A stretch of 64,000 nucleotides of DNA from Podarcis muralis (taxonomy: Eukaryota), in NCBI RefSeq assembly GCF_964188315.1, contig NC_135665.1:38750001-38814000 (forward strand), read 5' to 3'. The notes under the pieces are model-generated. The model was not told the DNA's origin and ran no database searches. It worked only from the letters and a program-made list of their open reading frames with translations. Below, in pieces: positions 11,001-61,543 of this stretch. Every line of letters starts with the position of its first letter. Position 1 is the stretch's first letter. A program made the translations under genes and the position numbers.

Positions 11001-14000
11001 AGCTTTTACACCGCTTTCTAGCAAGCATCAGTTAATAATGCCCAATGTTCTCAAAGTCTATCATTTGTATTCTTTACTTCAGGGATGGGGAACCACTGAC
11101 CCTCCACATGTTGCTGAAATCCAACTCCCATCAGCTCCATTACCAGAAAGGTTTTGCTGCGTGGACTGCAGCATCAAATCCCCAAATGAGCTTACTCCAT
11201 CAGACATTACTAATAGAACATTGAAATTTCTTTCTGTCTACCTTTAGAACACACTTTAAAGCTACTGAAGGTATCATGTGCCAGGAATAAAATTTATCCT
11301 ATATTATTTGTTTGCAGACTATAACCCTTTAGACACTATCTTTTTTATTTTCCAGAGAAAGAGAAACAACAATTGGTCTTACCTGAAGTGGAGATTTAAG
11401 ACTGGAACGCTGTAGACAATGGAGTGGGTACATCTCTTGTCAGCTGGCTTCCTCAGTTTTTCAGATTTGCCAAGCAGCCAGGCACTGACAGAGCCACTGA
11501 AACAAAAACCAATCCTATCTGCCTACTTCCGCCTTCCTGGCTCAGGAAGAAAAGTGAAGGGGGGGGGGGAGGCACAGAATTGAAAGACTAAACATAGAGA
11601 AGTGCATGACAGAGCAGCATAGGGTGGGGTCCATGGTCTATGGCATTCCAGTCTTAAATCTCCACGTCAGGTAAGACCAATTGTTTTATTTACTTCCTGG
11701 AATGCTGCAGCCAATTGAGTGGAACATGCCACAGCGGAGAAAAATATGGGCGGGTCCCAGCTCTGCAGATGCACCAACTATAGAACTTGGTGGAGGACAG
11801 TATGACCAAAGGCCACATCACATTGGTTCAATGTATAATGTTTGGAAAAAGTACTAAAAGATGACCAAATGGCCACTTCACAAATATCCAGCAAGGAAGC
11901 AATGGCCAAGAAAGCTGCAGATCAGGTGGCGGCAGACCTGGTTGAATGAGCTAATACCTGCGTTGCCCGGGGCAAATTGAGGGAATCATAGGCCAGGAAA
12001 ATACAGACCCTAATCCACCTCATTAAGGTTGTACTAGTGACCTTGGCCCCTTAGGTAGAAGGATGAAAGGATACAAATAAGGAATCTGTCTTCTGGAAGG
12101 GTTTCGTTCGGTGAATGTAAACTTTGAGAGCTGTCCAAGGAATACCACACCTTTTCCTTCATTCCTTCTGAAGGTGCTTTCCAGATTTCATGTCCAACAG
12201 GAGTTGGTTCTTCCCACCTTTTTCCCTAGCCCAAAATATCCGAAGGAAAAGGTGTGGTATTCCTTGGATGTCCGCACAGCTCTCAAAGTTTACACTGAGG
12301 GTCTGGATGGAGAAGTGGTCCCTGCTGCAATAGGGTGGGTGATACTGGAAGATGGAAGGGCGGAGCCACTGACAGAGTTTGAAGCTCCAACAACCACGGT
12401 CTTTGGGGCCAGAAGGGGGTTAGAAGCACCACTCGAGCCTTTTCCCATCTGATTTTGTGAAGAACTCAAGGAAGAATTGATTGCGGGGGAAAGGCTTAGA
12501 GCTGGCCTTGAGGCTACGGGGCGATTAGGGGATCCCATGCTTCTGCTTGAGGGTCGTGGAACCTTGAATAATAACGTGGCAGTTGGGGACTGGCTTTGCT
12601 CGCAAATAGATCCACTTGGAACAGACCCCAGAGAACTTGATGGAATATTTGTCTGGCTAGCATCCACTCTCCAGGGTCCAGATGTTTGCGGCTCAACCAA
12701 TCTGCCTGATAGTTGTCATCTTCGGCAATATGTTCCGCTGATAGGGAGAGCAGATGGTATTCATCCCAGTTAAAGAGACAAGCGGCTTCCATCTGAAGAG
12801 TGACAGATCGAGTGCCACCTTGATGGGTGATACGGGATTTCGCCATGGAATTGTCGGTCTGTATCAGGACGTGGTGTGGACAGAACCACCAAGCAAAGTG
12901 AATGATTGATAGTCTGGCCACCCGCAATTCCAGCCAGTTGATGGAGTGAAATTTTTCTAGATCCATCCAGAGACCTTGGATGAACTGGTTCCAGCAGTGG
13001 ACTCTCCAATGCTGGAGGCTCACATCCATGATAATCAGAGTTGTGAAAGGGGAAAAGCGTCTTCTTGGCCTTCTATCCTGCCTTTGACTAATAAGAATTT
13101 TCCTCTTATCCCTTGATTCTATCAGGACATCTTTTAGTGCCCCGTCTCCAAAAAGCTGACTGCCCGAAGAAGAAGAAGAAGAAGAGTTTGGATTTGATAT
13201 CCCGCTTTATCACTACCCGAAGGAGTCTCAAAGCGGCTAACAATCTCCTTTCCCTTCCTCCCCCACAACAAACACTCTGTGAGGTGAGTGGGGCTGAGAG
13301 ACTTCAGAGAAGTGTGACTGGCCCAAGGTCACCCAGCAGCTGCATGTGGAGGAGCGGGGAATCGAACCCGGTTCCCCAGATTACGAGACTACCGCTCTTA
13401 ACCACTACACCACACTGGCTCTTCTCCGAGAAGGGAACGGTGGAAAGATTCACCTTAGATGCTGTATCAGCATTCCAATTTTTTAACCAAAGAGTGTCTC
13501 TAGCTGCTACTTGGGATGACATTGCTGTAGCTGCAAATTGCATAGAGTCCATAGTAAAAGGTGAAGGTAAAGGTAAAGGTACCCCTGCCCGTACGGGCCA
13601 GTCGTGACCGACTCTAGGGTTGTGCGCTCATCTCACTTAAGAGACCGGGAGCCGGCACTGTCCGAAGACACTTCCGGGTCACGTGGCCAGCGTGACAAAG
13701 CTGCACTGGTGAGCCAGCACCAGTGCCGCACACGGAAACGCCGTTTACCTTCCCGCTATAAAGCGGTACCTATTTATCTACTTGCACTTAGGGGTGCTTT
13801 CGAACTGCTAGGTGGGCAGGAGCTGGGACCGAACGACGGGAGCTGACTCCGCCGCGGGGATTCGAACCGCCGACCTTACGATCAGCAAGTCCTAGGCACT
13901 GAGGTTTTACCCACAGCGCCACCCGCGTCCCTAGAGTCCATAGTGGCATCTGCCATAAAGGCCTGAGCTTTCAAGAGTTTAGAGAAAGTTTGGTATTGTT

Positions 14001-20000: not shown

Positions 20001-23000
20001 ACCCTGTGAATAGCCACAAGCACCCTGTCAACCTCATCTGGCTGCATAAGCTGAAACCTATTCCACAATGCATCATCAGTTGTGGCACTGGGTACCTGAC
20101 TTGGAAATGAAGAGTCAAGGTCACTCTGAAGTTGAGAGACTTTAGACTCAAAACATTTTAGTCATTATATTCTGTACTCAATTCACAATTTCACATCTGC
20201 ATTTCTAGTGATGTATATATATAAAATATACACAAATTTATGTAATCCCAATCTTTCTAATACAGTGGTGCCCCGCAAGACGAAAAACCCGCAAGACGAA
20301 AGGGTTTTCCGTTGCGGAGGCGCTTCGCAAGACAAATTTCCCTATTGTCTTGCGAGTCTTGCCATTTTCCCCCGCTTTCCCCCCCCTTTTTCAAAGCCGC
20401 TAAGCCGTTAATAGCCTTTTAACAGCTTAGCCACTAAGCCTTTAATAGCCGCTAAGCCGCTAATAGCGCTAATCGAATAGGGTTGCTTCGCAAGACGAAA
20501 AAACCGCTAGACGAAGAGAATCGCGGAACGGATTCTTTTCGTCTTGCGAGGCACCACTGTAACTAATTACAGAAGAAAGTTGTTCTCTTTTCCCCTGCTA
20601 CATCATTCTTTGCTTCCTATACAGTAGATCAGGCTTCCTCAACCTCAGCCCGCCAGATGTTTTTGGCCTACAACTCCCATGATCCCTAGCTAGCAGGACC
20701 AGTGGTCAGGGATGATGGGAATTGTAGTCTCAAAACATCTGGAGGGCCGAGGTTGAGGAAGCCTACAGTAGATTATTTAAACAAATTACATGTAACAACT
20801 TACGTTTCTGTCCTCTTTGACATTAGCAGAGATTAATTAAATGCAGATCGTTTACTTATTGCTTACTACAAATTGCACTGAGGTTCTGCATTCAAAAAAT
20901 GTCTTCCTTTTAAAGACTCAGCAAGCGATTTTATACTTACTAGAAAGCAAGCCTTGTTCAACACAAGTTTTCCTGCTAATTAAACATGTGCAAGAGAATG
21001 CTATCCACAATTTAAATTGTTCACAACACAGAGTACCGTATACACTTGAGTATAAGTTGACTTTTTCAGCACATTTTTAATGCTGAAAAAGCCCCCCTCA
21101 GCTTATACTCGAGTGAGGGTCCTTTCGGGCTGCTCCTTCCTCCGCCGCCGCCTTTGCCGCTGTCAGAGGAGGAGCGAGCAGCCCGATTCCTCCGCCGCTG
21201 CAGCCACCACCAGGTTTGTGGAGTGGTGAACTGGCTTATACTAGAGTCAATAAGTTTTCCCAGCTTTCTGTGGTAAAATTAGGTGCCTCGGCTTATATTC
21301 GGGTCGGCTTATACTCGAGTATATGTGGTATATTCCTCATAATATTGCTCAAGATAAAATTTCCTAAAGAGATGAGTTGGAATTTTGTTCTTTTTGTTTT
21401 AGTATTACAAAACTGTTATCTTAAGGTCAATGCTGAGGAACAAATATATTCATCCTATTAAGAATAATTAGTGTATTTAATATACCGTATTTTTCGCCCC
21501 ATAGGGCGCACCTTGTTTTTTTGGGGGGGAAATAATGGGAAAAAAATTTAATTCCCCCCGCAAAGCCCAGAAATGCAGGCAGCTCTGCGCAACCCTAAGG
21601 AGACCGGTGCAACTTCGCGCCGGGCTCCCTAGGGTTGCACAGAGCTTCCTGAAGCCTGGAGAGCGAGAGGGGTCGGTGCGCACCGACCCCTCTCGCTTTC
21701 CAGGCTTCAGCGAAAGCCTGCATTCGCCCCATAGGACGCACACACATTTCCCCTTCATTTTTGGAGGGGAAAAAGTGCGTCCTATAGGGCGAAAAATAGG
21801 GTAAATATAAAATATAAAACCATACCTTTAATGTCTTGATCATAGTTGGATCAGTTGACCTAACATAGAAACTCTTCAAGTAAGGCACAAACATGCCCTG
21901 GGGAGGGAAAACACAAATTAACAATATGTAGTAATTATACTGAGGTTAAAACGTAGCAATTTTGAAGTTATGTATTCAAAACGTCAAACCTTGTGTTGGA
22001 TTGACATCGTTGCTATATTCTGGAGAACAATGTACTGTACTTCCCTAAAAGTCAACGTTAGATAATTAATATGCATAACTCTCAAACACTGCTCTATTAG
22101 AAACATTTTTAAAGAGCTAGATTCAAAAGTAAAGGTTATTTAAATTCTTAGAATGCTCTTCAAAATGATTTTGAAGATATGTTATATAATGAAATATCCA
22201 AGTTCTTTGTTTAAAGTACTAAATGGGTTCAGAGTTATTGCAAACACTGCCAACATTGATGGAAATGAAATCTGGTACACTCCTTTGGGAACGTTGATTA
22301 CACCCATATAGTCAAAGTAAATTTACAGAAGCATACCTGGTTTCATTTCATTTTAAAAAGCCAGGATAGGTGTATGTAGGGAACTAACATGAGAGAATGG
22401 TGGCAGGAGAGGGAATGCATAAATCCTGAAACTTAATCTTTAAAACCTACTTCCATTGTATGCTTGTGCCAGATCTTGATTTTGAACCAAATTTATACCT
22501 TATGAATGTACACTATACTTCTTTTCTAGTGAGCTTTATAAAACTGAGCTCATTAAATACTATTAACATGTTTCAGATTTTGTAAATATTGATCAAATCC
22601 ATGTATGAATAATGAATACCTAAATTACTGTTATACAAGTGAAAACCAGTTTACCCTTTCATAACTTTTTACCAACCACTGTTGGGAAAATCAGCAGAAA
22701 TGTATGCTTGATTTACCTGTTACTACGAAGTAAACGTACTAATGATTTAGCAACAATCCCAGCTTCAGATTTGGGTGCTACATGCCAATAAAGTTGTGCA
22801 ATTGCCATCACCACCTGAAAAAATGACGACAAGTCACCTCCTTTCATCTGGTAATTACGCTTTTCTTTCACATAGTATAAACGTATTTGCATACAGAAAT
22901 TTTTAATTTCTTACGTTCCTTGAAGCAAAAGAACATATTCAAAGACATCAGGTATTACATTATTTTCTCTGAATTATAAGCAGCTTTCTCAGCAGATGAA

Positions 23001-24355
23001 AAAACAAGTGTAGGAAAAAAAGCTAGCTTCAAGGTCTAACCCCCCCCCCCCAGCTTTAAAATATACTAAGCCACAATACATGGCAAGGTAGGCCTGCACG
23101 TTACACGGTGGTTATGTTTGGATATCTATTGTACTCAGTACAGCCTATTTTCAATGGCTAAATTAAAAAACACAGCCTGGCTTTAAAACCCCCCAAAGAC
23201 ATTTATGAAGAAAGTTAATCTTACAGCAGCATTCCGGCTTTGTAGTAAAGGCTTTGTATTTCGTATAAGCAATCGGTGGTCTGGGTCCATAGAATAGGGC
23301 TTGTTTGCTTCCTGATTTTTCTCTTTCTGCTCTTCTTCAGATCCATAGAAATTCTTCTCACTATACTCTTCCAGAATTCCCTCCTATCAAAGGTGAGAAA
23401 AACGCATAAAAACATACATATTGCTTTACTTTTCACTTTCAGGTAGCACCAAAAACATAAATATGGTATGTCACCTTCTAAATTTTGTTTAAAATATTTT
23501 GAATTTGAACTACAGCTCAAATTTCTCAACAGATTCCTGGCAAACACTGTTTCTTTCTCAGAGCCTGTAGAAAAAACATCTATTGGCTGCCTGGGCCTCT
23601 GTAATTCAGCTGACCAAGCAAAAGCTCAATAAGTAGTATGTCTATATACTAGAATAATAGGAGGAGAACCATAAATCAAATATAGCATGAAACCTTAGAG
23701 ATCAATCAGTGAATCTTCCAGGGTACAAAATCTATTCCCCCATACTTTCATATACGCTTAACCACCTATTTCCCTGAGACCATCAAGAGACATTATGAGT
23801 TCACATAAAATAACAGCCTGATTATTTGGCATGTTATAAAAAGTATATGCTAACTTCAATGTTTTCAAATATCATACTGCGGAGACAAAAGATTCGGAGA
23901 GTAATGGTTTGCTGTTGTTTTCTTAAAGACTACAAGGATGTAAAATTATTGTGCCCAAGTTACTCTATTCAATACTCAAGAAATATCTGTAGAATCTTAA
24001 ACTTAGAGTGTAACTACCGTATTTTTCCCTCTATAACACGCAGATTTTTTCTCCTAAAAAGGAAGGGGAAATGTCTGTGCGTGTTATTGAGCGAATGTGT
24101 GGTCCCTGGAGCCAAATGGCAAAAAAAAATCAGGCAAAAATCAAATTGCGCGTCTCGGAGAAGGGAAACCTGAAAAGAGGAAGCGGCTGCTTTCCTGCAT
24201 TCTGCCTCAGGGTCTTACTGCCCACCCTCCTCTGTTTCCTTGCTGTGTTTGCTCAAATGGAACAAAGAGCAGGGAAAGCCCCTCCCCTCCAGGCAAGCAG
24301 AGAGGAAAGGAAAGGATCGTCTTTCATTCTAATTCCTCTCCGTGAAAACATGCAG

Positions 24356-24398
<43 letters not shown>

Positions 24399-27300
24399 CG
24401 CGCGAGCTGGCTGGCTTGGGTGGGTAGGTGAGGGAAAACTTTTGCCTTCCTTTCCTCCCTCCCGTTATACCCCTCTCCTGCATTCTTAGCCAGCTGCTTC
24501 TCTGCACACCCCTCTCCTGCTCCTTGTCCATTCTGTGTTTTTCCTTCCCTCCCCACTTAAAATGTGGTTAAAAACCATGGATCCTCAGGATCTTTGCATT
24601 GGGTCACCCCAAATTCACCATCAGATCACATAGCATGTCCATGGCTACAGCCTGCCCCCCAAAAATCACACACCCACATACCCAGTCCCCCCCCAGCCGC
24701 TTCCTTGGTCCCACAGGAAAGCCAGGCAGGGGCTGCACATCCTGCCCTCCGCCTCTTCCTGCTGCCCCCAACAGACAACCAGGCCTGCAAGCTTCCTCTT
24801 CTGACATCGCCCAGGCCCCCACGCAGCCCCCCACCAGCAAAACGCCCAGGAGTTTGAAGGGACCCGAGGGCCACGCAGCCAAGGGGTCTAACTCTGCAGG
24901 GAAAAGCTTCCTGTCTTTCCTCTGCCCCCTCCCCACCGGAAAGGGATGGTGGCTGCAGGCTCTGCCCCCCCCTTAACATCTGCAAAATGATTAAGGCTGA
25001 TACATTGTGTTACAGGATTTTATCTAGGTAACTTCCCTGAGCTGTCAAGTTGAAAGGGTACATTCAGGCATAATATTTCAACATTTAACAACTTTAAAGA
25101 TGTGCCCCCCCCCTGTAATTTCCATAACAGTTGGAAGGACAAAAATATAACCTCCTATGACAACTCCTGCAACCCATGAGCTTTCAGACAAAGATCATGC
25201 ATGGACAAATGTAAAGATCTTTGGAAAGTATTGATCGAAACCACAGTAACAAACGAATCAATGTATCTTCAAGGGAAAGAATAAGTAGATCCATTTGCAT
25301 ATATAGCTCTGTAGGCTTAATGAGATTCCCACAAAACATTAGGAAGGCCTTTCTGGTGGTGAGAGCAGTCAGACAGGGGAAGGGGCTTTTAGGGAGAGGT
25401 CGGGGGGGAGGGCATCTGCCAGGGATGCTTTAGCTGTGAGTCCTGAATTGCTGGGGGTTGGACTGGATGACCTTTGGGTCCCTTCCACCTCTATGATTCC
25501 ATGACCTTTAAGGGAAGTCACCTCCATCTTCCTCTCAGAGCAGATGCCCACAAGCCCTGGGCGGGAAGAGCCCGAGAGAGAGAGAGCCCGAGAGAGAGAG
25601 AGAGAGAGAGAGAGAGCCCGAGAGAGCGAGAGAGAGAGAGCCCGAGAGAGAGAGAGCGAGAGAGAGAGAGCGCAGCCAAGCCCCCTTCACCGCCAGCCCC
25701 CTCTCCCCTCCTCCCTAGGCGGCAGCTCCGCCATGACCACAAACGGCGGCGGCGGCAGCAGCAGCCGCGCGCGGCCCGGGCTCCCCTCGCCGGCCGCGAT
25801 AATTTTCTTAAATTATGTCAGCGGCGCCCGGCAGAGCAGCCCTCTCGGCCACGGCAGCCCAGCTCTCCCAGCCCCCGGGGGCCGCCCTCCTCCCTCGCGC
25901 ACCCGCAGCGTTCCCGCCGGGGAGGCGGCGCCCCCAGGAGAGGCGGCAGCGGCAGCAGCAGCCGCGCGCGGCCCGGGCTCCCCTCGCCGGCCGCGGGAGC
26001 CAAGGCGAGGGAGCCAAGGCGCGCGGACATTTTTTTAATTATTGGCGGAGCCCCCCCATGGAGTTGGCGCCTATGCAGTCCAATGATATACATGTCTACT
26101 TCAGAAGTCTCTTTGTGCTTAATGGGGCTTTCTGCCAGGTAAATGGGTACAGGACAGCAACCTCAGAGTTTAGGACTGTTATGAGGGAAAACAGGGCACT
26201 TGTGATTTTAACAGCTGTATCTTCACTCGGGAGATACTCAGCAGTGGGCCAGAGGTCTGTATAATCACTGCAATGACTGAATTCATGAGTAAAATTTAAC
26301 GCACAGTGCTAGATGTAGTTAGTTTATCACCTTTTTTGTTACCCACTGAAGGCAAAGTTGCCAGGCAAGATCTGAATTCTTATCCCAACAATTATACCAA
26401 CCGCTAATGATTCTGTGTAATTAAGCTTGGAACGCACATTTTAAAATCAACAGCTAATGAATTGGTGAACTTAAAAGACATGCTTTCAAGATACTCATTT
26501 ATATGAAATAATAGCTAGAGTGTTTACACACTAAATATTTTAAGTCTTATATCAGTATGACTAGCACTACTGTACTATCACAAAATCCTAATAGGGATAT
26601 GAATCTTTATTCTTTTGTAAGAATGAAGATAATAGGGCTTGTACCAAAATTAATACACCGTAAACTATTATCTTCCTCTATGTTTATTGGTGGGTCCCTT
26701 TACCTGTTGAGGCACACAAAATAATTCAAAATTACTAATCCTGCAAGAGCAGAACATTTAACTTGGGGAGGAGGAAATATACTGCTCTGAAAAAGAAGGT
26801 AAATTCATAAAATAAAAATGCAAATATGCATTTTAACATTCTTGAANNNNNNNNNNNNNNNNNNNNNNNNNNNNNNNNNNNNNNNNNNNNNNNNNNNNNN
26901 NNNNNNNNNNNNNNNNNNNNNNNNNNNNNNNNNNNNNNNNNNNNNNNNNNNNNNNNNNNNNNNNNNNNNNNNNNNNNNNNNNNNNNNNNNNNNNNNNNNN
27001 NNNNNNNNNNNNNNNNNNNNNNNNNNNNNNNNNNNNNNNNNNNNNNNNNNGNNNNNNNNNNNNNNNNNNNNNNNNNNNNNNNNNNNNNNNNNNNNNNNNN
27101 NNNNNNNNNNNNNNNNNNNNNNNNNNNNNNNNNNNNNNNNNNNNNNNNNNNNNNNNNNNNNNNNNNNNNNNNNNNNNNNNNNNNNNNNNNNNNNNNNNNN
27201 NNNNNNNNNNNNNNNNNNNNNNNNNNNNNNNCACAAGAAACCTTGTTATGTGTTTATTTAAGAACCTATTGAAAAAAGCATGGAGACCTGCTGATTTCAA

Positions 27301-30300
27301 AGAGGTTCTCCTTCTATTTTAGCAATTAAATTAGCAAGAAACCAATCTGGTTTCTGAACTTTCTTGCCCTGTGCAGACATAATACTGCCAATCTCTTAAT
27401 CATGGTTAAGAGACAGAGTGGCTCCCAGGTTTACAAACACAATCCTCTTTCTTTGTCAATTTTAAATGTGCTGTAGTATTACATATGGACTGGTACTAAT
27501 CTGGGCTACCACCAGTGCAGTGGTAATGAATACAACACTAAAGGAGAAGCAGCATGTAAACCACTTGCAGTTTCTTAACAACATTTATGAGTTTGGACAC
27601 ACTGCAGTTGTGCTGGGCCTCTATCAGGCAGCATTTATGAGTGAGCAGCTAGTGATATTGCCTGTTCTTAAAGACTGCAATACCTTGTCATCCTTGTGGC
27701 AGCAAAAGCTAAAAATGTGCCCATGCTCACAAGAATGGTACAGAAAGAAACAAGGATTTGAATGAAAAGCGAGATAACTACAATAAATTTTCCAATAACA
27801 ACAAAAATACAACTTCATTTGTTGCAACTATTATGAAGGTTTGGGGTAAGATATGAAATGCTGTTGTGGCAATTCTTCTAAAACTCCTTCACAACAGAAA
27901 GGAGTTCATGAAACAACAAACATAAATTATTTTCTTTCACTGCAAGTCCTATCGAATCCAAGAGATGGAATCCTCTTATCAGTAACCAGTGATGGGCAAT
28001 GCTGATGGCAGCAACAAACGTTATGAAAATCTAATCTACTGAATTATTTGCTTCGAAGTTATCAAATAAAAACAGATAACAAAATTCCAGAATGCAGCAA
28101 GGTGACTGAATCATTGAATGAATGCTATTCATCTCCCTCAAGCACAATAATATTCCTTTACAGAGTATGTTAATAGAAGTACACTAAAGAAGAAAAGAAA
28201 AAGACATCTGGATATGAACAGGAATGTTAGTGTGCAGGTTAAACAGCAAAAAGATCTTGTTTCACATGTAACTGGAAGCAGCATTGTCTTTTCTGTTCTG
28301 ACTAGACTGACTTTGATCAATCCAGGTCATGAAGCTATTTGCACTACATATCATAATTTTGTGGAAAAAAATACTATGTACATAGGAACGGGAATGACAA
28401 ATGGGAAGAAAGACTTCAGGATTGCACCAATCTCATCGCTGCTGAACCTGTTTATCATGAATACAGCCACACACAGCCTTCGAGTCAGCAAAGGAAGCTA
28501 CAACTTCCATAACTGGATAACCCATTCTTCAAGGACATCCCCAAAATGAAGATGGGTGTATAGCATTAATTGATCCCACTGAGACGCTGATATAGTCTCC
28601 AGAAAATGGCTTGTATATGCTGGCTGAAACTTATATACAGTGGTACCTCGGGTTACATACGCTTTGGGTTACAGACTCCGCTAACCTAGAAATAGTACCT
28701 CGGGTTAAGAACTTTGCTTTAGGATGAGAACAGAAATCAGGTGGCGGCAGCAGCGGGAGGCCCCATTAGCTAAAGTGGTGCTTCAGGTTAAGAACAGTTT
28801 CAGGTTAAGAACGGACTTCCGGAACGAATTAAGTAAGTAACCAGAGGTACCACTGTACTCTAATGGGCTCTAAACTGGCAATGAGTGACCAGAAAAGATA
28901 TTTGTGGTAAATATCGCAATAAAAATGTCAACAGATGTAAAGTATGCAACAGCTGTGAAAAATTTTTATTTTAGGACTCATCAGAAAAGGGATTGAAAAT
29001 AAAACTGTCAATAGCATAACATTATACTAATCTATGGAAATCTTTTAATAGTATGTGCAGTTCTGCTGCGGCACCTAAAAAAGAATATTGTAGAACTAGA
29101 AAAGGTTCAGAAAAGAGTACCCAGAATGATCGAGGGAAATTATGAGGAAATATTACAGTATGAATGAACAAACTGAATCTGATAAAAGTGTCCTTTATTC
29201 TTGCCTATATGAAACAAGTCAAAAAGCTAAGCATTAATCCATCATCCATTGAATCATATACACACTAGGGGCTGCCACCACTGCTTGCTCCACCCACCAA
29301 CCCCACCTACCTCCTTGCCAACAGCCCTTTCCCCCCACATGGCCAAACACACTCCCTTTATGCCTCCCCCATGCTCACCAACTCTCCTTTTAAAAATTTG
29401 AGGGAGGTGCTTCACAGAGTGGCTTGCTAAACTGCTGTGTGAAGAGCCTCCCCTGCTCCATTATGCCTTGCTCCAGATGTGTTTAACAGAGGGGACAGCA
29501 GTGCACATTGCCTCCCCTCTCCCTGGGCCTGCCTACTGGTGTGGCCACCAATATGGCAGATGATTACTACACCTTACATTGTGTGCGCGCGCGTGCATGC
29601 GCAAAAGTTCTATTCTGCCAACGTTAAGGGAAAAAATATCATGGTGTTGCACAGCATACAATTACATTCCTAAAACACTGTATAACCTCCTGTCAACCTT
29701 GGGGATAAAGCAATGGAAAAACCCAATCCAAGTGTCTGCACACAACATGTAGGCTAGGACATGTGATGCTTAGAAGAAGCCTTTCAAACAATATATGCAG
29801 AAGATAAAATACTACACATGCCAACACAAAAAACAGTAACACACATAACATTATCTTGTAGTACTACAAGTATTACTAGAGGATGGAATTTAACATACAG
29901 TGGTACCTCGGGTTAAGTACTTAATTCATTCTGTAGGTCCGTTCTTAACCTGAAGCACTACTTTACCTAATGGGGCCTCCCGCTGCTGCCACGCCACCAC
30001 CGCACGATTTCTGTTCTCATCCTGAAGCAAAGTTCTTAACCTGAGGTACTATTTCTGGGTTAGTGGAGTCTGTAACCTGAAGCATATGTAACCCGAGGTA
30101 CCACTGTATAAGTGTAGGAAATACAAGTTTACGACGGGATGAGAGCAGTAATAGAATGATGGTAAATCATTTCATATCTGAAAATGCTCTCACCAGTTTT
30201 AAAATGCAGGAAGCCAGTACAACTCAATCTGACAAACAATCCAATATGATCAATAATCCATTAAGTAAGCCTTGTATTTAACAAGTTGCCTGGTAGCAAT

Positions 30301-33300
30301 AGGTGACCAAGAATTCCATGCAGATGAGTGGGCTGGCAGAAAAGGAGAAGATCATTTCATTCCTTCTCTACCAACCCACTTTGTTACTGTGCTAAGCATG
30401 AGGAAAGAAGGATCTGTTTGTCCACAACTAGTACAAAACAGAGATAGATCTGTCCTTCTCCACCAAACCTGCTTGATATAATGGGTTTTTTTCTACTTTT
30501 TTTCTGCAAGGTAGTAACTTTTGTGAGCCAAGTTACAAGACTGCACTAATCTTCAAGATCAATCTATCTGCCTGACTGTAAAGTGTCAGAAAGTGTGGTA
30601 TTGCAAGTGTATTTCCAGAAATACAATGACTAAGACTTCATTTAGAAGATCCAATCAAGCCCATACTAGCTGATGTGGAGAGGAGTTGACTGCTCATTCC
30701 CCACAAAAATGCTTTCTTTCAGAAATCTACAAAATAATGATGTTTATTCATTTTGATACTCATGGTCTGATGGTCTTGATGCATGACAAATCATTAACAA
30801 TGCTAATAAGCAAACTGTTGGATCAGTTGTACTGGCCATCTGAGAGCTATTGATGTACATTCCTGAAAGTGTTTGTTACTAAGCCTGCTCCGAACAAGCT
30901 AGAAGTATTCAAAGTAACTTTTTAAAAGTTACTTACCTCTTTCCAAGGGCTGACAAACTGCATGCGTGCATATCGAGTCAGCATGTGGATGATGACAACT
31001 TGTCCCCATTCCTCCACATCCACCAACAGATTACAGAGTTTTCTGTAGTTCTTGTGAATCAGATCTATCCTGTCTGGACAGACTTCTTCAAATGCCATCA
31101 CAACACTTCCTGCTACAAGCTAGAGAACAAGAATCAAGCATATAAGAATCAGTAACTCCAATGGACTTACAATAAGTTTGAACAAGCTGTAGGAAAGGGC
31201 ATGTAGGTTAAGACTACTTAGCAAGTTTGTGAGAAATGCAGCTGCTATGTGGCCTTTATTTCATTTCCTATATTGTGGAAATGCTCTCCAGACAGTGGAT
31301 GTGCCACTTTATCTAATTGGCTACATCTGCTTTCTTAATTGTCCATCATTGATATGACTTTATTCATTGGCAAAAAGCACTTAAAGGTGGGAAGAGCACT
31401 TATCAATCCAGAAGAACTCAGCCATAGAGGACCACTCTTCAGGCAGATGTGTGATTTATTCATTTAAGATTATATACATATAACTGGGTCTATGCCCCTG
31501 CTCGCTCTGCTCACCAACCCCGCTGCCATTCCTCCCATATTAACCCCCTCGAGCTTCTCCTTCCCACCTCATGTAACTACTAAGTTTGCTTTTAAGATTC
31601 TGAACCCTATTTCTGAAGCTACTTCTCTCTTCTATTCTGCAGTCCTGCTTTGCACCTCTTTTCACCTTCATCCCCATTTCCATATCTCCTCCTTCTTTCT
31701 TTTGTGCAACCCCATTACATGCAAACCAACCCCATGGTAACCCCTTGCATCTTCCTCCTCCCAATTATGGAGCAGTCTCCCCCTCCTTTTCTTCAGACCC
31801 GTTCATGCCCCTGCTTTCATCTTTAACCCCATTCCCTCCTTTTTTGGAACTCCCTTTGCACCCCCCATTTTCACTTTCACCTCCTTTTCCTCTCCAACCT
31901 TCTCCTTACTTCTTCAACTCTCCCTTGCACACAGATCACTCCCATTTCCATGCCTTATTCACTCTCTCATTGTACAGCCCCCTTGGCACACACAGCTCAT
32001 GATGATATATGTTACTGTAGCTTTAATATGAATATGAGCTTAAGAGCAAGCCCATCAGCTATCTTGTTCAGTTAGATAAGGTGTAGTTCAGTTGATGGAT
32101 GTAGTAGGTATAGGGGCGTCCACTTGTTAATATCGCTTCTAAATAACAGCACTGAATATGAAACTTGAAGACAACACATAGTACCAGGAGTAAAATACAT
32201 TGTAGGAAGGTACTATGGAATATTTGAGGGCTCTTCATTCTTCAATTCTTTCACACAGTGTTTGAAACTCCCATTGCTCTAGGAGCATTTTGCGACAGGG
32301 AATTTCACAAATGCAAGCAGTTTTTGAGCTCTGGGCACTGTACTATGCCTAAGATTTCAGATTAAAATCGCCACTGTTACTCAGAGGTAAATCCCAACCA
32401 AGTTCAATGGGGCTTCCTCCCAAGTAAAACGTGCATGGATTGGGTACCTGAAAACTTTCTTTTCTTTTCCTTTAAACCCAACATGTTTTGTTTAGGTTTT
32501 AGTTGCCTTGTTTAATGTACTTTTAATGAATGATGTGCTTTTAAATTTGAAATATACTAGCCAGTTAGTTATGATGGTTTGAGTAGTGCATGTTAAAAGT
32601 GTTATCTACCTCAGACTCTCACAGTGATGCTTAAAATCAAAACAAATTTTAGAGTGGGATCACTGAAGGACCCATAAGTCTTTGTCAATATAAAAAAACT
32701 GTTAAATGTACAGCCATAAATGAGTGCTTATATCCACACTAGTGTTTGCAGACTACAGTATTGTCCATATATACCAGAGAAAGCAAGAGATCATATGCCA
32801 CGGATGGCAAAAAATGAATATTTACTGTGCCAACCTCTTAAAACATACATAACAAATTCAAACTTTATCTGTCCCCTGTAATAATATGTAGTACAAAAGG
32901 TACATATTAGCCACATACACTCTCACGTTCCTCTGTCACAAAATTATATTACATCCTAAGATTGTTCAAAGATTAATGAGATTACCTTCCTGAATGATAA
33001 GCAGTGTGCCACTTTATTTCAGACAGCCTTAAAAAACCATTTTGAACCTTTTGATTTTTTTATCTACCAATTGTTGCTTGTACAAGAGTTAGCAAAAATA
33101 CTAGTAGTACTGAAAATAATGCATCTCATTGCCCTGTCAGCTATCAGTTGCAAATATGACATAACCACTTGTCACTGTGTATTGCCTATTATCTCTTCCC
33201 ACCCCTCCAGCAACTGCTTTAATAAATTTTGGTTTTGTTTCCACCACATGCTATGCAAAATAGCTCCTATGATCAGGCTTCTGTATGAAGCAACTGATAT

Positions 33301-36300
33301 GTATGCAGTTAAGCATGCATGTGAAGCCGCTTTCTGTAAGAAAATTAATGTCACCTTCTAGCAGAGCACTGGGGATCTGCATTTCAACCTCTAAAATTTC
33401 CCCAATGATTTAAAGTAAGCAATTAAATAGAAGTACAATTTACTGAAATGGCACTTTTGGAAAAATATTAAATACAACGATATTCACTTGTTAGAGTTTT
33501 CCCCTATTTTTTGGTTGACATTTGGTTTATTAGTATGCACCTACGATTACAACTGAAAGAAAACAGCTCAGAATATAGTCTTGCTATTATGCTAAACAAG
33601 TTCCAAGTCCTGTGGGGATTTCACAAATTACCAATAACTATAAACGTGACGTTGCATTTATTGTCTCCAGCCCTGCAATGTACTGGTACCTGCTGGTCCC
33701 AGCATGTATACAACTCATTCCATAAAGAAGGGAATTGATTATTTGTAAAGGACTAAAGAAAATGCATTATACTTACATTTATTTTCTATATCACATCACT
33801 TGTAGGAGGAAAATGTCTCATTGTTGACGTTTACAATCTTTTTCTTTCTACAGTTTTTACAACTATTTGCATTAGTTAACACTGCCATTAATTAATATTA
33901 TCAAGATTACCTGACTACATATGAAAGCATGCAAGCTTTCATATAAAATAAAAATATTGCACTTAACAAACCTTAAATGTTGCATATATAAAAAAGAATT
34001 CTTTCTGTCCATTCCCCCTATTTACATTATCTAAACACATACATACACCAAGATCCCACAAACAACCTATAAACCTGCATTTAGCTAAACATAAAAATTC
34101 GTAATCATTGTAGCTACAGGTGCTACTTCTCCACAAGAGTTTTAAGGGGAGCAAAATGAAGAATAGGTACTCCACAATTGCCAATATTCAATTTAAATTT
34201 CATATTACCCTAAAATTAAGGCTACACACAGAAAGCTCAGAATGTTGCCTTTTGGCTAGCTAATTACCAGTTAGGCAGAAACTGACAGTTCCAAGACTAC
34301 TAATAGTAAACTAAGGCACTGTTCTTTCTACACCTTGAAAGAGGGTGTGCAAATTCAGTAAACACAGAGGTGGGGCAAAATCAATTTGTGTATTTAGAAT
34401 GACAGGTCTTTCACAAGGAGTAAGAATCTTCAGCATCCACTTTTAAAAGTTCATTGTATTTATGAAAAGATAGATATGAATATTAACTTATTTGTAAAAA
34501 CTCCATCATATAACACTCCACTCCACCCTCCACGCCAGAATTTACAAACATGTTCTGCGCTAAACATAAATGATTAACAGTAAGTTCTTTCCAATTCAAG
34601 CTATAATTTGAATTGATCTTGATTCTACATGTTTTTAGACAACAGCACACCTCAAAGCAAATTTCCACTATGCTGGGACCTATCTAAATATTTGGGAAAC
34701 AGCTGATGATCTTAGTTTATTAAATGTTCAATATCCCATAAAACATTGAATTAAAACAAAATGATTCAATCAAAACATAAAAAAACAAAACAAAAAACAG
34801 TTTACAGTGACACTGACATACTGAGATGAAAATTAAATAGTTTTTTTGTGCAAGAAAAAATAAATCATACCTACAAAACTACCAATGAGCTCAACAAATT
34901 CNNNNNNNNNNNNNNNNNNNNNNNNNNNNNNNNNNNNNNNNNNNNNNNNNNNNNNNNNNNNNNNNNNNNNNNNNNNNNNNNNNNNNNNNNNNNNNNNNNN
35001 NNNNNNNNNNNNNNNNNNNNNNNNNNNNNNNNNNNNNNNNNNNNNNNNNNNNNNNNNNNNNNNNNNNNNNNNNTCATNNNNNNNNNNNNNNNNNNNNNNN
35101 NNNNNNNNNNNNNNNNNNNNNNNNNNNNNNNNNNNNNNNNNNNNNNNNNNNNNNNNNNNNNNNNNNNNNNNNNNNNNNNNNNNNNNNNNNNNNNNNNNNN
35201 NNNNNNNNNNNNNNNNNNNNNNNNNNNNNNNNNNNNNNNNNNNNNNNNNNNNNNNNNNNNNNNNNNNNNNNNNNNNNNNNNGATTGATAATATGGTGCAA
35301 GTTGGCCTATGCTGCCAACATTTCCTTCTCTTAAATTAATGGCCATCCCACCTGCCCTAATCATACAGCCCAAATGATATTCCCCTTCTTATTTCAATTT
35401 TCTGGAAGCATGGAAGCTGGTAAAGATCAGTCATTTATCTTCTAATAGCTGGATAATAGATCTATCACAATACAGCATCTGCACAAACTCAAGTTATTTT
35501 CCCACCACAGCAGTAAAGCTTTTTATCAACATTGAATCAATAACTTTGGAAAATCCTAGGTTACCCTTACATCTGTAATCTGAACGCCAGACATTACTTC
35601 TAGCATATATCTGTTAAATATGTTAAAAGAATGCACCTTACTTTGTTCCATTTTCCCAAAGGTAATATTCTAGTTTAGAACACATCAGTAATCTCATCAC
35701 AAAGCCATCACCAATTCTTCAGCTCATTTTTAACAAGCAAATTATTTGACCTCCCAAGAGTCAGCTGCTACAGATAATCCTATCTAGCCTTCACAGGGCA
35801 CATGGGCACTCAATTTGCTTCAAAAGAAAGCTGTATTTACACCCACAGCTGGAGACCTTAAAAGCCCTTTGAACATCAGTGAACTAAGAATCTGCTATAA
35901 AATAGCGGTGAGATTGTCATCCTTACTCCACAACTTTAACATTTTGTGTCTAAGGATGAAAGAAAACCATTTTGTTTCTATTCAAGATTCCAGGGAGCCA
36001 AAATATAACAAAGTCCATAGAATGGCAACTTGTTACTTTCCCAACATTCAACCTTGGATCATCCTAGGGACTCATATGACAATTTGGATCACAGTGAAAC
36101 AGTGGCCAGAGTGTTTTCCTTAAAACTGTAAGAGGATGACATTTTTCTTCTGATTCACACATGTCTGTAATCATGGCACGGATTAACAATGAAGATGCTC
36201 TCCATACCAGACTGCATACCATGGTGTTATGTGCGGTCTATAAAGGCCAAATCTGCTAAGGAACTAATCTGAATACAGTAGCCTTCTCAGTAGCTACCTG

Positions 36301-39300
36301 GACATTTAGAGTGAACATCTTTCAAAAGATGCTGTTGCTTCTGGAACTGGTTTCCAGCATTCACACTCAAACAGCTACACAGGGGGAAAGGAAGAAGAAA
36401 CTTAACGACTGAGGTTTTATGGGTTCATTTACATAAGAATTGATCCTAAAATGTCTCTTCTTGGCCTCAGTCCTTTCAGAAAGGACTGAAATATAAACCG
36501 AAAGAAATAAGCAAGGCACTGGGGTAACATGCTTCTCCACCCACAGTGCCAAATTGTGTCTTCTGCCTGTCTAGTTATTCTACCCTGTTCAGATTAAAGT
36601 TTAAAGTACCATAAAGTTACAGGTGAAAAGAAGAGTTTTGATTGCATTACAAAGAAGCTGAATCTGTATTACTTACAGTGCTCTTGTCTTTCAGAAGTTT
36701 CTCTATCACTTCAATTAACAGTTCTTTTTGCTCAGGATCAAGGCTAAAAAGTGAACAAAAAGAATTCAGATTCTCTCATTTTAAGAGTGGAATTATGAAT
36801 TTCACCAAGGGTTATTCAAGCTACTTCTTAATGAATGGGCTAGAAGTCCTGCACGCCATCCTTTCAACCCTGCCCATGGAAATAAAATATTTAAAGTTTT
36901 ATTAAGAATATTCTGTCAAGATGTAGGCTTCATTTCTTTGTTTTGCTCAACAGACTATGTTTTAACGGTGTTTGGTGCTGTACTAGGTTGTTTCATGGAT
37001 CTTCTATTTACGGTTGTGAACCGCTTTAAGGATTTTTTGATGGAAAGCAGTCTAAAAATTATTTTAAATACAACAAAAATGTATGCAAAATGAAATCAAA
37101 CAATTAATGGCAGGAGTTAATCTGACTAATGAAATAACTTTGATAAGTGCTGCAAATATACAGCACTGACTGGTCTTCACTATGTTAATTCAGAACCTTT
37201 AGTCAAAGTTGTCTTGCTCATTTTATGCCCATTAGCAGGAAGCAGTTATCAAAAGCTGTAGCTAAACTTCATTATAACACACTCTACTGAGCACTAAATA
37301 CCTATCTTCCATATTTATGGCTAGAGAACATACCTGTAAAGCTTTTGGATTGCATGGGCGGCATTTTTTCTAACGTAGGGTGATAAATCAGCTGATGCTT
37401 CTTTGATAGCAAGCATCATAATCGGAACAATAATTGGCACTCTGATGCTGGATAGAACTCTCAAAGCACTTGCACGGATTAACTGATTAGGATCCTAAAA
37501 TAAAAATAAAATACCAATAGTCATTAGATAAATTCAAGCATATGCTCTTTTGTACTGGAGACTATTTTTAAAATGTCATTTTAAGTTCTTAGTTATAATT
37601 CAACGCTTAGTCAAAATAGTCTCCAGTACAAAAGAGTGCCTTCCATTTATTGCTACTATTGTAAACAATAATTCTGCAGGCAAGTCACCATTGTCTATTT
37701 TCCAAATGAAAACACCAAGATTAAGAGAATCATTTGCCCAGGCCAAAGTAGTCCATAGAAAGGGAAAACTGCAAGAGATATATCAGATGTTATACTGTAT
37801 TGCAACAATGCTACTTTGTCAACCCAAGGAGATACCTCATAATTAAATTTAAAATCTTGATTTTGCTTTATGGTGATAGTTAAATTGCTTGTTACTGTAC
37901 TTAAAGGATCTAGGAGATATCGTAACATTTTGTCCCTCTCTTTAGATTCCCTTGCTGTTTGCACAGGACTGATATACACAGTTCAAGCCTGTACAGTACT
38001 CAAGTCTACATGTAAGAAATATTTCTTCATACTCTTAACACCACCGAAGTTGTTAAAAGCACCTGAGCTCACCCCACAATCCAAACCCAAATTATGGGGA
38101 AAACTGCTCTAAAGCCTGAGACAGCCATGTCTGTAGCAGCCAAGGTTTACATTTCCCTTTTCTCATCTGGGCATGAAGCCCTTTTCAAGAAAGGCCTGTT
38201 ACCAAGCAATGAAGGCAGGATCTTTATAAAATGTGGATGCAAATCTGGTATGCTTTTAGACAGTATTCTGATAAAATAAAGAGAAGCGACAGCCAAAGTA
38301 GCGTAAAACATCAAAATTAAGGATTGCTTAGCTTGAATGTCAATACCAAGCATGACTTAAAAATGTTCAGGCACTGACGGCATAATTTCTAAGCTGCCCC
38401 CAAATCAGAACAGAATCAGTCAAACATGTGCTACCGATCCTACCTTTTTAAACCTAAAACATCTCACTGCAGTAGCAAGATCTCATTTCCACATCCCCAT
38501 GGTTCTGAGCCCATTATTGGGAAAGGCATGTAAATGACACATCAGAGTTGAAGAACTTCATCTCTGCTACATAAACTGATTATCTTTTAAATTAGGAATG
38601 AGGGAAAGCAGTCTTTACAAAATTCACAAACTTTCTGCTTGTGTGTGACTAACATGACTAAACAAATGCATACTTCATATGCAAAACCAGAATATTTTCT
38701 AAGCAAAGCTGATCCCCCAATTGGAGTCTCTGTTTAATAACAGTAGCCGTACCAAGTAGGCCAGCATCATCACCATAAGGTTCTAGGACATGTTAAATAT
38801 TCCTCTACTTATCCTTAGCTAGTTAGTTCTAGCTTTCCCCAATAAAAATTATGTGTACCTTTGTAATGACAGACAACTTCCCAGGAAAACACTGCTAACT
38901 AGAAATTTACTCACTTTCAGAGCACGCTGAAAGGTGCTAATTGATAGCAATGCCAGGTCCTGCTGCTCTTCTGCATAGCGCATCAGGTATACGTATACAA
39001 GTTTTTTAATCTGAAAAACAAATTAGTTCATAATAGTAAAAAACAAACTTTATTATGGTAGCAGACCAGCATAAGATACAAACATGCAAATAAAATAAAG
39101 CACATAAGACTTAAAGAGGAGAGGGATAAAAGTTAATAGTTAAAAGTGGTTATAAACTTAAAGCAGATAGACACAAAAGACAAGCGGTTGAAAGGAACAA
39201 TAAGGGAAGGAACGTGAAGCAGCACAGGTCTTGCATTCTGTTGTTGTAGTTGTTGAGGTTCATGATAGTCAAATCAGAATCATTTAATATAGTTCAGAAT

Positions 39301-42300
39301 ATACACTCTAACAGATGTCCAGGAAGAATTTTGCCTTCCAAACTTATTTTATGCAATGTGTATTTCTGAAGGGGCACAGTCATGAAGAATGGTCATTGTA
39401 TTTTCCCTAGGACAACAGATTCACAGATTAAAGGCTTCCAAGCTCTAGTTTCATGAGTATTACAAATTAGTCAGTTTGATCTTGCTTAGGCTTAAAAAAA
39501 TTATGCTTTAGTTAAGTTCTAAACGAAGTCTGTGTATGTTTAACTAAGCACAGAAAAAATTGTTCTGAGTTACATATTGACCATAAAGGTTTATATTGGA
39601 GACTCTGAAAACCCCTTAACTACAGCTGTGCTATAATTATTATCACTATATGAAGAAATATTTTTCTGCCCATTCTGCCAAAAAGCAAGATAATGAATCA
39701 CAGAAGGTTAGGAGCCACTAAATTATTTGTTGTTCTACTATGAAGAAGCAGCAATCAACATTGACAACAAGAGGCCTTTGTAGTGAATGACTGCAGGTGT
39801 GCAGAGAAAGCCTACTTTCCTTGAAACCACTCTGAGACTAGAGGCAGGAGGACTTTGATTTCGTGCCTAGACCATTCTTTTATCATTTACCTTCATTCAA
39901 TGTTACAGCACTCCTCCCTTTAAAACTAATAATAACAGTGCCATATTAGAGCTGAGGAACAGAGGCAGATCTGTTTAATTAGTTTATCAATACAAGTATA
40001 TCAAACTTCATGAGTTATTGACTAAACCTTTGATTATTTCTGTTCTACACCACCAATTGCTTTCTAGGTCACTTTTCTGCATCTTTTGACATGACACATA
40101 TAACAAGACTAGGGCAGAATGTTCTTATCAAAATGAATTTTACTAGAACAACAAAACGTTTTTCACTAGTTTTGAGGGCAAAAATTCCTTCCCACCCATG
40201 TCACATGCCCTCTGTATGATTCCAGTTTCTTAAGGGAATTCTAAGCTGGAACACCACCCACAGAAGAGAACGAATGAACAAGCATGACCCATGCCCTGGT
40301 TCTATGTTGGCAGAGTACACAGCATCATTGGCAAGTATCCAAAAGGTCACTTGGCAAGCCTCAAGTTACAACCAGCTCCCCTCCCAGCAGTCAAAATGCC
40401 ATTCAGAATGCACTGAAACAGTGCAGTTTTTGCCCACAGAAAGGTTGTTTTATTTCTATTGCTACAGCACTGTAAAGAAATGAAACATGCAGAAACTTGA
40501 GGCCTGCTATAAAATATAAGTATTCTAACATTATGCAGTCTTTTGCTAGTTGTTGTAGAAAAGCACCAGAGGTTAATTTTATTTTGTTCAACGTTCTTGG
40601 ATCCAATGGTACATGTCCAGCATCTGTCCAGCACACTGTTCACTTAACAAGTATTTCACCACTTTACTATGAACCAAACAAATTCTGAATACAGTACATG
40701 ATTTTCTCTATTTCAGCATACAGTTAAATCTACAAGTATTTTTAACAGTGAACTCTCATAAAAAAAACACTTTCATGGGTAGAATTGAAAACATTTACAT
40801 TATAAAAGAATAAAATTGCAAGGGTATAAGCTTTGTTATCATACCTCAATATTTTTACTCGCTACATTCTTCACTACGGAAGGAAACAATTCAGATGCAT
40901 TCTTCCCTCTGGCAATCATCTTGGAACACAAAAGAAAACATTTATTATAGAATCATAGAATTGGAAGGGACCCAAGGGTTATCTAGTCCAACCCCCTGAA
41001 ATGCATAAATAATTATATTATAACAATTATATTTCTGCAATGCAGAAAAATTATAGCACACTATTTTCAAATAAAGTCCATGATTATGCTATCATGGACT
41101 TAAATTAAGTTACTATATTTCACTTCTAAAATTCTTCAGAGCATCTTCATCTTTAAATGAAGTTAAATGTGTCCTTTAAAATATCAAAAGTTGTCTACTA
41201 GATAGCCATGCAACTATTATTATTTTTTTACAATCTGAAAAGTGTATGAAAGATTTACAAAACACAAGCAGTTTTGGTATTTATTGGGCAAGAAAGTAAC
41301 AAACACAAAAGGAAGGCAAATCAGAACACTCTTGGCATTTCTATTCAACTTTATTAGTCATCCTCTGCCTCTCTGCCAGGATATCCTGTGAATTTTTGCT
41401 CTGATACATACCTAGCTAAATTAAGATAGAAACTTAGGACAATCCTAAGAATGCTTACTCAGAAAATCCACTGATTTCAGAATTACTTCTAGGTAAACGT
41501 TTACCGGATTGCAGCCTAACTTCACCATTTCCAGAATTAATGCTTTCCCCACTAACAGGTCTCAGATAATTTGGCTGAGCAGTTTAATACTACAACATAT
41601 GAAAAAAGTTTCAGGCATATTTATAAACACACACAATTTGTTGTGATGGTATATTTGGAATATCACTAGCTTTAATATATATCATAGAAATTCACATGTA
41701 TCTTGCATTATTTAACTGACCAACCATAATAGCTGCAGTGTAGCATGTAAATATGTATTTAGGATCTTTTTAAAGTGTATTTTGTCTCATTAAGTCATAA
41801 TGATCAGTGTAAATCCTCCTTTGTTCATGGCTCATTAACCCAAGAGAACATAATGGGTCTTTCAAAGACCAAGATATCATTTCAGTTTAGCAGCTTTAAA
41901 TAGCCTGAATGTTAAAAGCTTTGGTATTGCATATTATATAGAATGAGAGGTTAAGAGTTTGCGATCAGGAAAGTTTCTTTGCTAACCTGTTGCAGTTCAC
42001 AACACAGTAAAATGCTGGCTATCATAACCAGTGCTTTACAAATTACCCTTTACAACAGGAATGCAACTGCTCAGCCTAGCTGTAATAGTGTGAGTGTAGA
42101 ATCTATGCTGGAGTCTGAAGCTTTAGCTCCGTCATACTACAAATCTGGGTACTATTCTCTCACTATAACATTAAGCAATCTCTCCATTGGCTTATTTACA
42201 ACATAAACTCACAGTTCATTATCTACTTTCAGGGTATGACAGGGTGGACTGATTTAAATCAATGAGATTTCAACCAGATACACACCCTTAAAAGGGAAAG

Positions 42301-61501: not shown

Positions 61502-61513
61502 GCCCGCGCGCCG

Positions 61514-61543
61514 TTACTACTACTACTACTACCACCACAACTA
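61514..61543. repeat. (CTA)5/(CAC) trinucleotide repeat in the AP3B1 5' leader
   Basis: Directly visible; reads (TAG)5TAA on the sense strand. Confidence 0.9.

What the first reader, a model, noticed from the sequence alone, without database searches (positions are those of the whole stretch)
25545..26260. Unexplained CpG island with a candidate antisense first exon inside AP3B1 intron 7
Seen: a promoter-like block on the strand opposite AP3B1, with a GA microsatellite, CpG-dense GGC/GCA repeats, a good-context ATG (CCCCCCATGG) at 26058 opening 27 codons ([27 protein letters not shown]) that end exactly at a phase-0 donor-like CAG|GTAAAT (26138/26139), then AT-rich sequence. An upstream ATG at 25733 opens a 101-codon low-complexity ORF ending at 26038. 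CpG retention on this scale usually implies germline hypomethylation (established). I know of no nested gene in amniote AP3B1 and do not recognise the peptide. Inference: first exon of a nested antisense gene or lncRNA, or a transposed copy of another gene's promoter.
Basis: partly seen in the sequence, partly recalled or inferred. Interest (0 to 1): 0.7.

Follow-up and report, generated by a model that had tools for sequence, protein, structure and literature searches.

The report
Silent intronic CpG-rich block, partly duplicated
A real but ordinary 0.5-kb CpG-rich stretch sits in intron 7 of a lizard AP3B1 gene; nothing supports its proposed antisense first exon, and part of it is a young near-identical copy of DNA found elsewhere in the genome.

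Summary
The CpG-rich block is far above background: 25551-26150 has GC 0.68 and CpG o/e 0.82, against 0.31 for the window. It lies in AP3B1 intron 7; AP3B1 is on the minus strand.

The candidate first exon (26058-26138) is not supported:
- Two stranded RNA-seq runs cover AP3B1 exons 8-10 at 2-18x with correct splice joints. They give zero reads over 26025-26846 and no joint at 26138.
- Low-depth contigs of two other runs cross the donor unspliced.
- Equally good donor-like sites occur about 0.7 per kb, and 31 in the window follow an ATG-open frame.
- No Pfam, word-search or full phmmer relative exists.

Part of the island (25815-26007) has a 97%-identical copy elsewhere, flanked by different DNA. 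All four listed differences between the two copies are CpG transitions. Recent duplication alone can therefore explain the retained CpGs; germline hypomethylation is not required.

No TIR/TSD, LTR ends or retrocopy marks bound the block. It is thus not shown to be one of the promoter-carrying hAT transposons that this scan reported earlier elsewhere in the same genome.

Verdict: an ordinary orphan CpG-rich block built from young duplicated low-complexity DNA; its function is untested. Low interest.

The parts
25567..25671 (.). Compound GA microsatellite with a 24-30-nt higher-order period (GA runs interrupted by GCCC/GC)
   Evidence: Tandem Repeats Finder; direct-repeat family D1
25680..26057 (.). 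CpG-dense core of the block (GC 0.75, CpG o/e 0.91, 47 CpG)
   Evidence: no other copy in the 64-kb window
25745..25798 (+). First copy of the internal 54-nt direct repeat (GGC/AGC run plus GC-rich tail)
   Evidence: family D2, 98% identical to 25942-25995; the flanks align only weakly
25942..25995 (+). Second copy of the internal 54-nt direct repeat
   Evidence: family D2
25995..26021 (+). Perfect 14-nt tandem duplication (1.9 copies), a recent slippage event
   Evidence: 100% matches
25815..26007 (.). Segment with a near-identical copy elsewhere in the genome (193 nt, 5 substitutions and 1 gap). The 503-nt contig that carries it, at depth 40, diverges from the window on both sides.
   Evidence: tables 7 and 8 (run X15, record 7); its flank 30-mers are absent from the window; the four listed differences are all CpG transitions
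26058..26138 (+). It is unsupported; the frame runs on to 26264.
   Evidence: zero RNA depth and no joint; no relatives; chance-level pattern
26136..26144 (+). Donor-like CAG|GTAAAT, not used in the reads examined
   Evidence: contigs 26118-26376 and 26081-26297 cross it unspliced (table 8)
25444..25502 (+). Tail of a dispersed repeat just upstream of the block, with a second copy at 40947-41005 on the other strand
   Evidence: 85% over 59 nt

Best explanation
The block is a lineage-specific, young, GC-rich low-complexity segment inside AP3B1 intron 7. It was built by recent duplication and slippage: a compound GA microsatellite, a 54-nt internal repeat and a 14-nt tandem duplication. At least its 193-nt centre is a recent copy of, or donor to, a sequence elsewhere in the genome. 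It scores as a CpG island mainly because it is too young for CpG decay to have worn it down, not necessarily because the germline keeps it unmethylated. It is not the first exon of a nested gene. In the RNA sampled it is silent, and the ATG-ORF-donor pattern is coincidence.

Shown here: the composition, the repeats, the paralog, the absence of RNA and of splicing, and the absence of protein relatives.
Inferred: that youth explains the CpG retention, and that the block has no coding role.
For: - Composition and repeats.
- Paralog: a 503-nt contig at depth 40 matches only 25815-26007 (5 substitutions, 1 gap) and differs on both sides. Another contig fits up to 25816 and then continues differently (tables 7 and 8). 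The flank strings of both are absent from the window.
- CpG decay: the four listed substitutions (25861, 25909, 25948, 25968) are all CpG<->TpG/CpA transitions, two in each copy, although only 28% of positions lie in CpGs.
- Young repeats keep their CpGs in this genome: copies 13569-13932 and 44797-45161 are 95% identical yet still show CpG o/e 0.96-0.97.
- RNA: AP3B1 exons 8-10 reach depth 2-18 on the expected strand with GT..AG joints. Depth is zero over 26025-26846 in both runs, there is no joint at 26138, and the few reads over 25695-26024 lie in both directions. In X23 all three reads that cover 25916 carry the extra C also seen in the paralog contig.
- No relatives: Pfam, word search, and phmmer against 1.84 billion representatives. 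The single phmmer hit is a 73-residue tandem-repeat protein at 25% identity and is spurious.
- Exon-like patterns are common by chance.
Against: - Only two RNA-seq samples of unknown tissue were read, at about 12% of each run, so tissue-specific use (testis, embryo) is not excluded.
- Methylation was not measured, so a protected unmethylated island remains possible.
- The paralog was seen only as contigs of a run whose library type is not on record. Genome-wide copy number and the direction of copying are unknown.
- Two small runs of unknown library type have unique low-depth contigs right next to the block (25106-25567, 26081-26376) but none elsewhere in the introns laid. This could hint at local enrichment such as open chromatin or local transcription.
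Confidence: 0.55

Rival explanations
1. It is a genuine orphan (non-methylated) intragenic CpG island. It would act as a tissue-restricted promoter of an unannotated antisense lncRNA or short transcript, or as a CpG-island-type enhancer or Polycomb target, and is simply inactive in the samples read.
For: - It meets the sequence criteria for a CpG island.
- About half of mammalian CGIs are orphans, and many are intragenic and active only in some tissues (PMC2944787, PMC8873577).
- A CCAAT-box complement (ATTGG) next to a GC-box-like GGCGGAG lies at 26042-26052.
- Small runs show contigs clustered around the block.
Against: - There are no RNA reads and no joint at the candidate exon in two stranded runs.
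- GC skew of the core is negative on the + strand (-0.155 at 25700-25999), opposite to what plus-strand CGI promoters usually show.
- CpG sites are visibly decaying in this copy (25861, 25948).
- Much of the block is microsatellite and recently duplicated low-complexity DNA.
Confidence: 0.28
2. It is the cargo of a mobile element, either a Pack-type hAT like those this scan reported elsewhere in the genome or a Helitron-like carrier, that captured a host promoter or 5' exon and dropped it into intron 7.
For: - Earlier notes of this scan describe many hAT elements with CpG-island cargo in this genome. These are leads, not tests.
- A near-identical copy of the 193-nt centre exists elsewhere.
Against: - No terminal inverted repeats with a target-site duplication bound the block, for right ends up to 26846 or from 27245 to 30900.
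- No parent gene was recognisable from any frame.
- Sequence right of 26057 behaves as single-copy (depth about 3 against 40).
Confidence: 0.1
3. It is an assembly artefact, with a GC-rich piece wrongly placed or duplicated in the reference.
For: - DNA runs hold only 0.61-0.68 of the sampled words of 25680-26400.
- X23 reads carry an extra C after 25916.
Against: - Fourteen runs, most of them marked as probable DNA, from five studies hold most of the stretch.
- Contigs join the unique flanks to the edges of the block (25106-25567 and 26081-26297).
- The missing words are as well explained by poor short-read assembly of 75%-GC DNA.
Confidence: 0.04

Closest known systems
Orphan / intragenic CpG islands of vertebrates (Illingworth et al. 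2010, PMC2944787; review PMC8873577)
   Same: It is a CpG-dense, GC-rich block of about 0.5 kb inside a gene, far from any annotated promoter, and it passes the standard sequence criteria.
   Different: The defining non-methylated state and transcription initiation were not shown. No RNA was seen here. Much of the block is microsatellite and recently duplicated DNA, and part of it has a 97% copy elsewhere.
Pack-type hAT transposons carrying captured CpG-island promoters
   Same: Both involve promoter-like CpG-rich DNA sitting in an intron, a first-exon-like ORF no better than chance, and at least one further copy of part of the sequence.
   Different: This locus has no TIRs, no 8-bp target-site duplication and no identified parent gene.
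Young CpG-rich dispersed repeats of this genome (e.g. 13569-13932 and 44797-45161 in the window)
   Same: Both show CpG o/e near 1 that persists only because the copies are recent, with differences between copies enriched in CpG transitions.
   Different: The repeat in the window is a defined element of about 365 bp with two full copies 31 kb apart. The block studied here is a mosaic with only one segment shown to be duplicated.

Membership tests
CpG island (sequence definition: Gardiner-Garden & Frommer; Takai & Jones) | Length >=200 (500) bp, GC >=0.50 (0.55), CpG o/e >=0.60 (0.65) | tested here: met
   25551-26150: 600 bp, GC 0.68, o/e 0.82
Orphan CpG-island promoter | Non-methylated in germline or soma | not testable with these tools
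   No bisulfite or CAP-seq data were available. Indirect evidence: two CpG->CpA changes in this copy relative to its paralog.
Orphan CpG-island promoter | Transcripts initiate at the island | tested here: not met
   Zero depth over 26025-26846 and about 1 read per bin, in both directions, over the core. This was in two stranded RNA-seq runs with AP3B1 exons at 2-18x. Only two samples of unknown tissue were read.
Protein-coding first exon of a nested gene | Splice joint from the donor at 26138/26139 | tested here: not met
   No joint or loose end is listed at 26138, and contigs 26118-26376 and 26081-26297 are unspliced
Protein-coding first exon of a nested gene | Encoded peptide has relatives or a known domain | tested here: not met
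   Pfam gave none, the word search gave none, and phmmer on 25815-26138 gave only a spurious tandem-repeat hit
Pack-type hAT transposon | Terminal inverted repeats flanked by an 8-bp target-site duplication | tested here: not met
   An exhaustive scan found one chance-level pair only. Ends hidden in the N stretch 26847-27231 could not be examined.
Pack-type hAT transposon | Whole unit present in several copies; cargo traceable to a parent gene | tested here: inconclusive
   Only 25815-26007 is shown to have a second copy. The parent was not found. A genome-wide search is not possible with these tools.
Processed retrocopy | Poly(A) tail and flanking direct repeats | tested here: not met
   There is no A/T tail at either edge. 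The flanking 8-9-nt repeats are at chance level: local alignment scores 29.5 against a null of 26.8 +/- 4.4.
Solo LTR | TG...CA termini with a 4-6-bp target-site duplication | tested here: inconclusive
   Only 4-5-bp matches at scattered positions were found, and none coincides with the edges of the block
Known structured RNA (Rfam) | Score at or above the family gathering threshold | tested here: not met
   The best hit in 23900-26846 scores 25.9 bits against a threshold of 99

The most novel reading that the evidence does not exclude
The block is a recently born, lineage-specific promoter. It would be a duplicated CpG-island fragment that landed in AP3B1 intron 7, stays unmethylated, and drives an antisense transcript in a tissue not sampled here (testis or embryo). 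That would show promoter birth by dispersal of CpG-island fragments without a recognisable transposon.
Probability: 0.08. Interest if true: 0.45.

Novelty: new member of a known kind. Interest (0 to 1): 0.15.

Why it matters
It matters little for gene content, because there is no evidence of a nested gene in AP3B1.

It is a useful caution for scans of this lizard genome. A block that passes every CpG-island sequence criterion can be young duplicated low-complexity DNA. Here, CpG retention does not by itself show germline hypomethylation or promoter function.

If the island were later shown to be unmethylated and active, it would be one more example of orphan-island promoter birth.

Tried and rejected
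- Self-BLAST of the block against the window found only the internal 54-nt repeat and a flanking dispersed-repeat tail.
- TIR+TSD scans found nothing convincing, with right ends tried before and after the N stretch.
- The LTR-type TG..CA plus TSD scan and the long-TSD scan gave chance-level hits only. Three colinear 8-9-mers between 25315-25423 and 26117-26139 looked suggestive, but local alignment is not above shuffles.
- The Rfam scan gave nothing.
- Exact-product look-ups of four island ORFs found none on record.
- The word search with the 149-aa ORF gave none. It only sees proteins of 82-260 aa.
- The full phmmer search gave one spurious repeat-protein hit.
- Earlier findings searched by sequence and by relatives were blank.
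- The orthologous intron of other lizards was not fetched.
- The N stretches at 26847-27231 and 34902-35281 were left untouched.

Full report
**Context**

The window carries the 5' half of AP3B1 on the minus strand. Open frames with unmistakable AP3B1 peptide text mark these exons:
- exon 1 at about 61361-61513, inside its own CpG island at 61151-62050
- exon 2 at about 45370-45450
- exon 3 at about 40850-40930
- exon 4 at about 38900-39010
- exon 5 at about 37330-37494
- exon 6 at about 36680-36760
- exon 7 at about 30925-31119
- exon 8 at about 23223-23383
- exon 9 at about 22716-22812
- exon 10 at about 21987-22043

Stranded RNA reads confirm exons 8-10 and their GT..AG joints on the minus strand. 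Earlier notes of this scan name the genome as a wall lizard (Podarcis). I did not test that.

**Observation**

All sequence features are present at the stated coordinates. The block is strongly CpG-rich. Region 25551-26150 has GC 0.68 and CpG o/e 0.82, and the core 25680-26060 has GC 0.75 and o/e 0.91. The window mean is 0.31 and the sequence just downstream is at 0.24.

The block is one of seven CpG-rich blocks in the window. One is the AP3B1 promoter. Two (13569-13932 and 44797-45161) are 95%-identical copies of a dispersed repeat that still shows CpG o/e 0.96-0.97. In this genome, CpG richness therefore often just marks young repeats.

**Anatomy**

The block is largely recent low-complexity DNA. 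It contains:
- a compound GA microsatellite with a 24-30-nt higher-order period (25567-25671)
- a 54-nt direct repeat at 98% identity (25745-25798 and 25942-25995), whose flanks align only weakly
- a perfect 14-nt tandem duplication (25995-26021)

No other copy of the core exists in the window.

**The candidate exon**

Two stranded RNA-seq runs (X23, X24; about 12% of each was read) cover AP3B1 exons 8-10 at depth 2-18, all with the first mate on +, which means minus-strand RNA. The same runs give depth zero in every bin from 26025 to 26846, and no joint or loose end is listed at 26138.

Over the GC-rich core there are only about one to two reads per bin, in both directions. In X23 all three reads across 25916 carry an extra C that is also seen in a paralogous contig, so they probably come from elsewhere.

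Two further runs of unrecorded library type hold low-depth contigs (26118-26376 and 26081-26297) that run straight across the donor unspliced.

On statistics, donor-like sites scoring at least as well as CAG|GTAAAT number 41 on + and 45 on - in the window. The scoring used a simple position matrix written from memory. Of these sites, 31 follow an ATG-open frame of 20-100 codons. The ATG at 26058 has G at +4 but C at -3, and the frame continues to 26264.

None of the island's ORFs matches Pfam. The 149-aa frame has no relative in the word search, which covers candidates of 82-260 aa. A full phmmer search of the 108-aa frame 25815-26138 against 1.84 billion representatives gave one hit. That hit is a 73-residue tandem-repeat protein at 25% identity whose score is summed over six repeats, and it is spurious. 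The exon reading is thus unsupported. Tissue-restricted expression cannot be excluded, because only two samples of unknown tissue were read.

**A copy elsewhere**

In run X15 a 503-nt contig at depth 40 matches only 25815-26007 (193 nt, 5 substitutions, 1 gap). It carries 60 and 249 unlike letters on its two sides. A second contig fits up to 25816 and then continues differently. The adjoining 30-mers of both are absent from the whole window, so these are other loci.

The four listed substitutions are all CpG<->TpG/CpA transitions, two in each copy: 25861 A/G, 25909 C/T, 25948 A/G and 25968 G/A. Only 28% of the segment's positions lie in CpGs. At 25948 the window's own first repeat copy and the paralog agree on G, so the CpG was lost in this copy.

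The island is therefore at least in part a recent duplicate, and its CpGs behave like decaying, hence methylated, CpGs. At about 2.6% divergence only a small share of CpGs would have been lost, so youth is enough to explain the CpG density. It is also not disproved, since no methylation data were available.

**How the copy arrived**

This scan has reported many hAT transposons with CpG-island cargo in this genome. I tested that lead here and it is not met:
- No terminal inverted repeats with a target-site duplication bound the block. Right ends were tried up to 26846 and from 27245 to 30900.
- There are no convincing TG..CA ends with a duplication, and no poly(A) tail with long direct repeats.
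- Suggestive colinear 8-9-mers proved no better than shuffled sequence.

An end hidden in the N stretch 26847-27231 cannot be excluded. I did not try to fill that stretch. No Rfam family fits.

**Verdict**

The CpG-rich block is real. It is best read as young, duplicated, slippage-prone GC-rich DNA that happens to pass the CpG-island criteria. The nested antisense first exon is not supported.

The main rival is a true non-methylated orphan island with tissue-restricted activity. This is a common and well-described class (PMC2944787, PMC8873577). It stays open because methylation, CAGE and chromatin data are lacking. One small oddity could hint at local enrichment: two small runs of unknown library type have unique contigs only beside the block.

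Either way this is an ordinary kind of feature, and interest is low.

Noticed in passing
window 25024-25199: RNA reads at depth 22-33 (first mate on +) match this intronic segment. All of them carry G>A at 25058 (71/71 and 108/108) and share one consistent foreign sequence before 25024. An expressed near-identical paralog of this roughly 175-nt piece therefore exists elsewhere, at a level above that of AP3B1 exons.
   Followed up: no
window 24015-24700: This is a very abundant dispersed repeat, with contig word depths in the hundreds to thousands and RNA depth up to 100 on both strands. It has further partial copies at 48003-48088 and 21721-21803. It holds an 18-nt-stem hairpin (24025-24042 / 24078-24095, 89% complementary) that gives a weak sub-threshold Rfam match to mir-2068 (25.9 bits against 99). 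Reads show strand-switch joints there.
   Followed up: partly
window 13569-13932 and 44797-45161: These are two 95%-identical copies of a CpG-rich repeat of about 365 bp (CpG o/e 0.96-0.97) in AP3B1 introns. Six of their 16 differences are CpG transitions. They are a handy internal control showing that young repeats mimic CpG islands in this genome.
   Followed up: partly
window 26847-27231 and 34902-35281: Two N stretches of about 380 nt lie in introns 7 and 6, each split by 1-4 real letters. The first is only 700 bp from the CpG block.
   Followed up: no
window 24500-25000: This GC-rich (0.58) but CpG-poor (o/e 0.21, TpG o/e 1.57) stretch lies just upstream of the block. It looks like an old, decayed GC-rich repeat and contrasts with the undecayed core at 25680-26060.
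   Followed up: no
window 25106-25567 and 26081-26376: Runs X15 and X16 (library type not on record, guessed RNA) hold unique low-depth contigs only beside the CpG block and none in the other unique intron stretches laid. This is unexplained. It could be local transcription, open-chromatin-type enrichment, or selection bias, because the runs were picked for holding this stretch.
   Followed up: no
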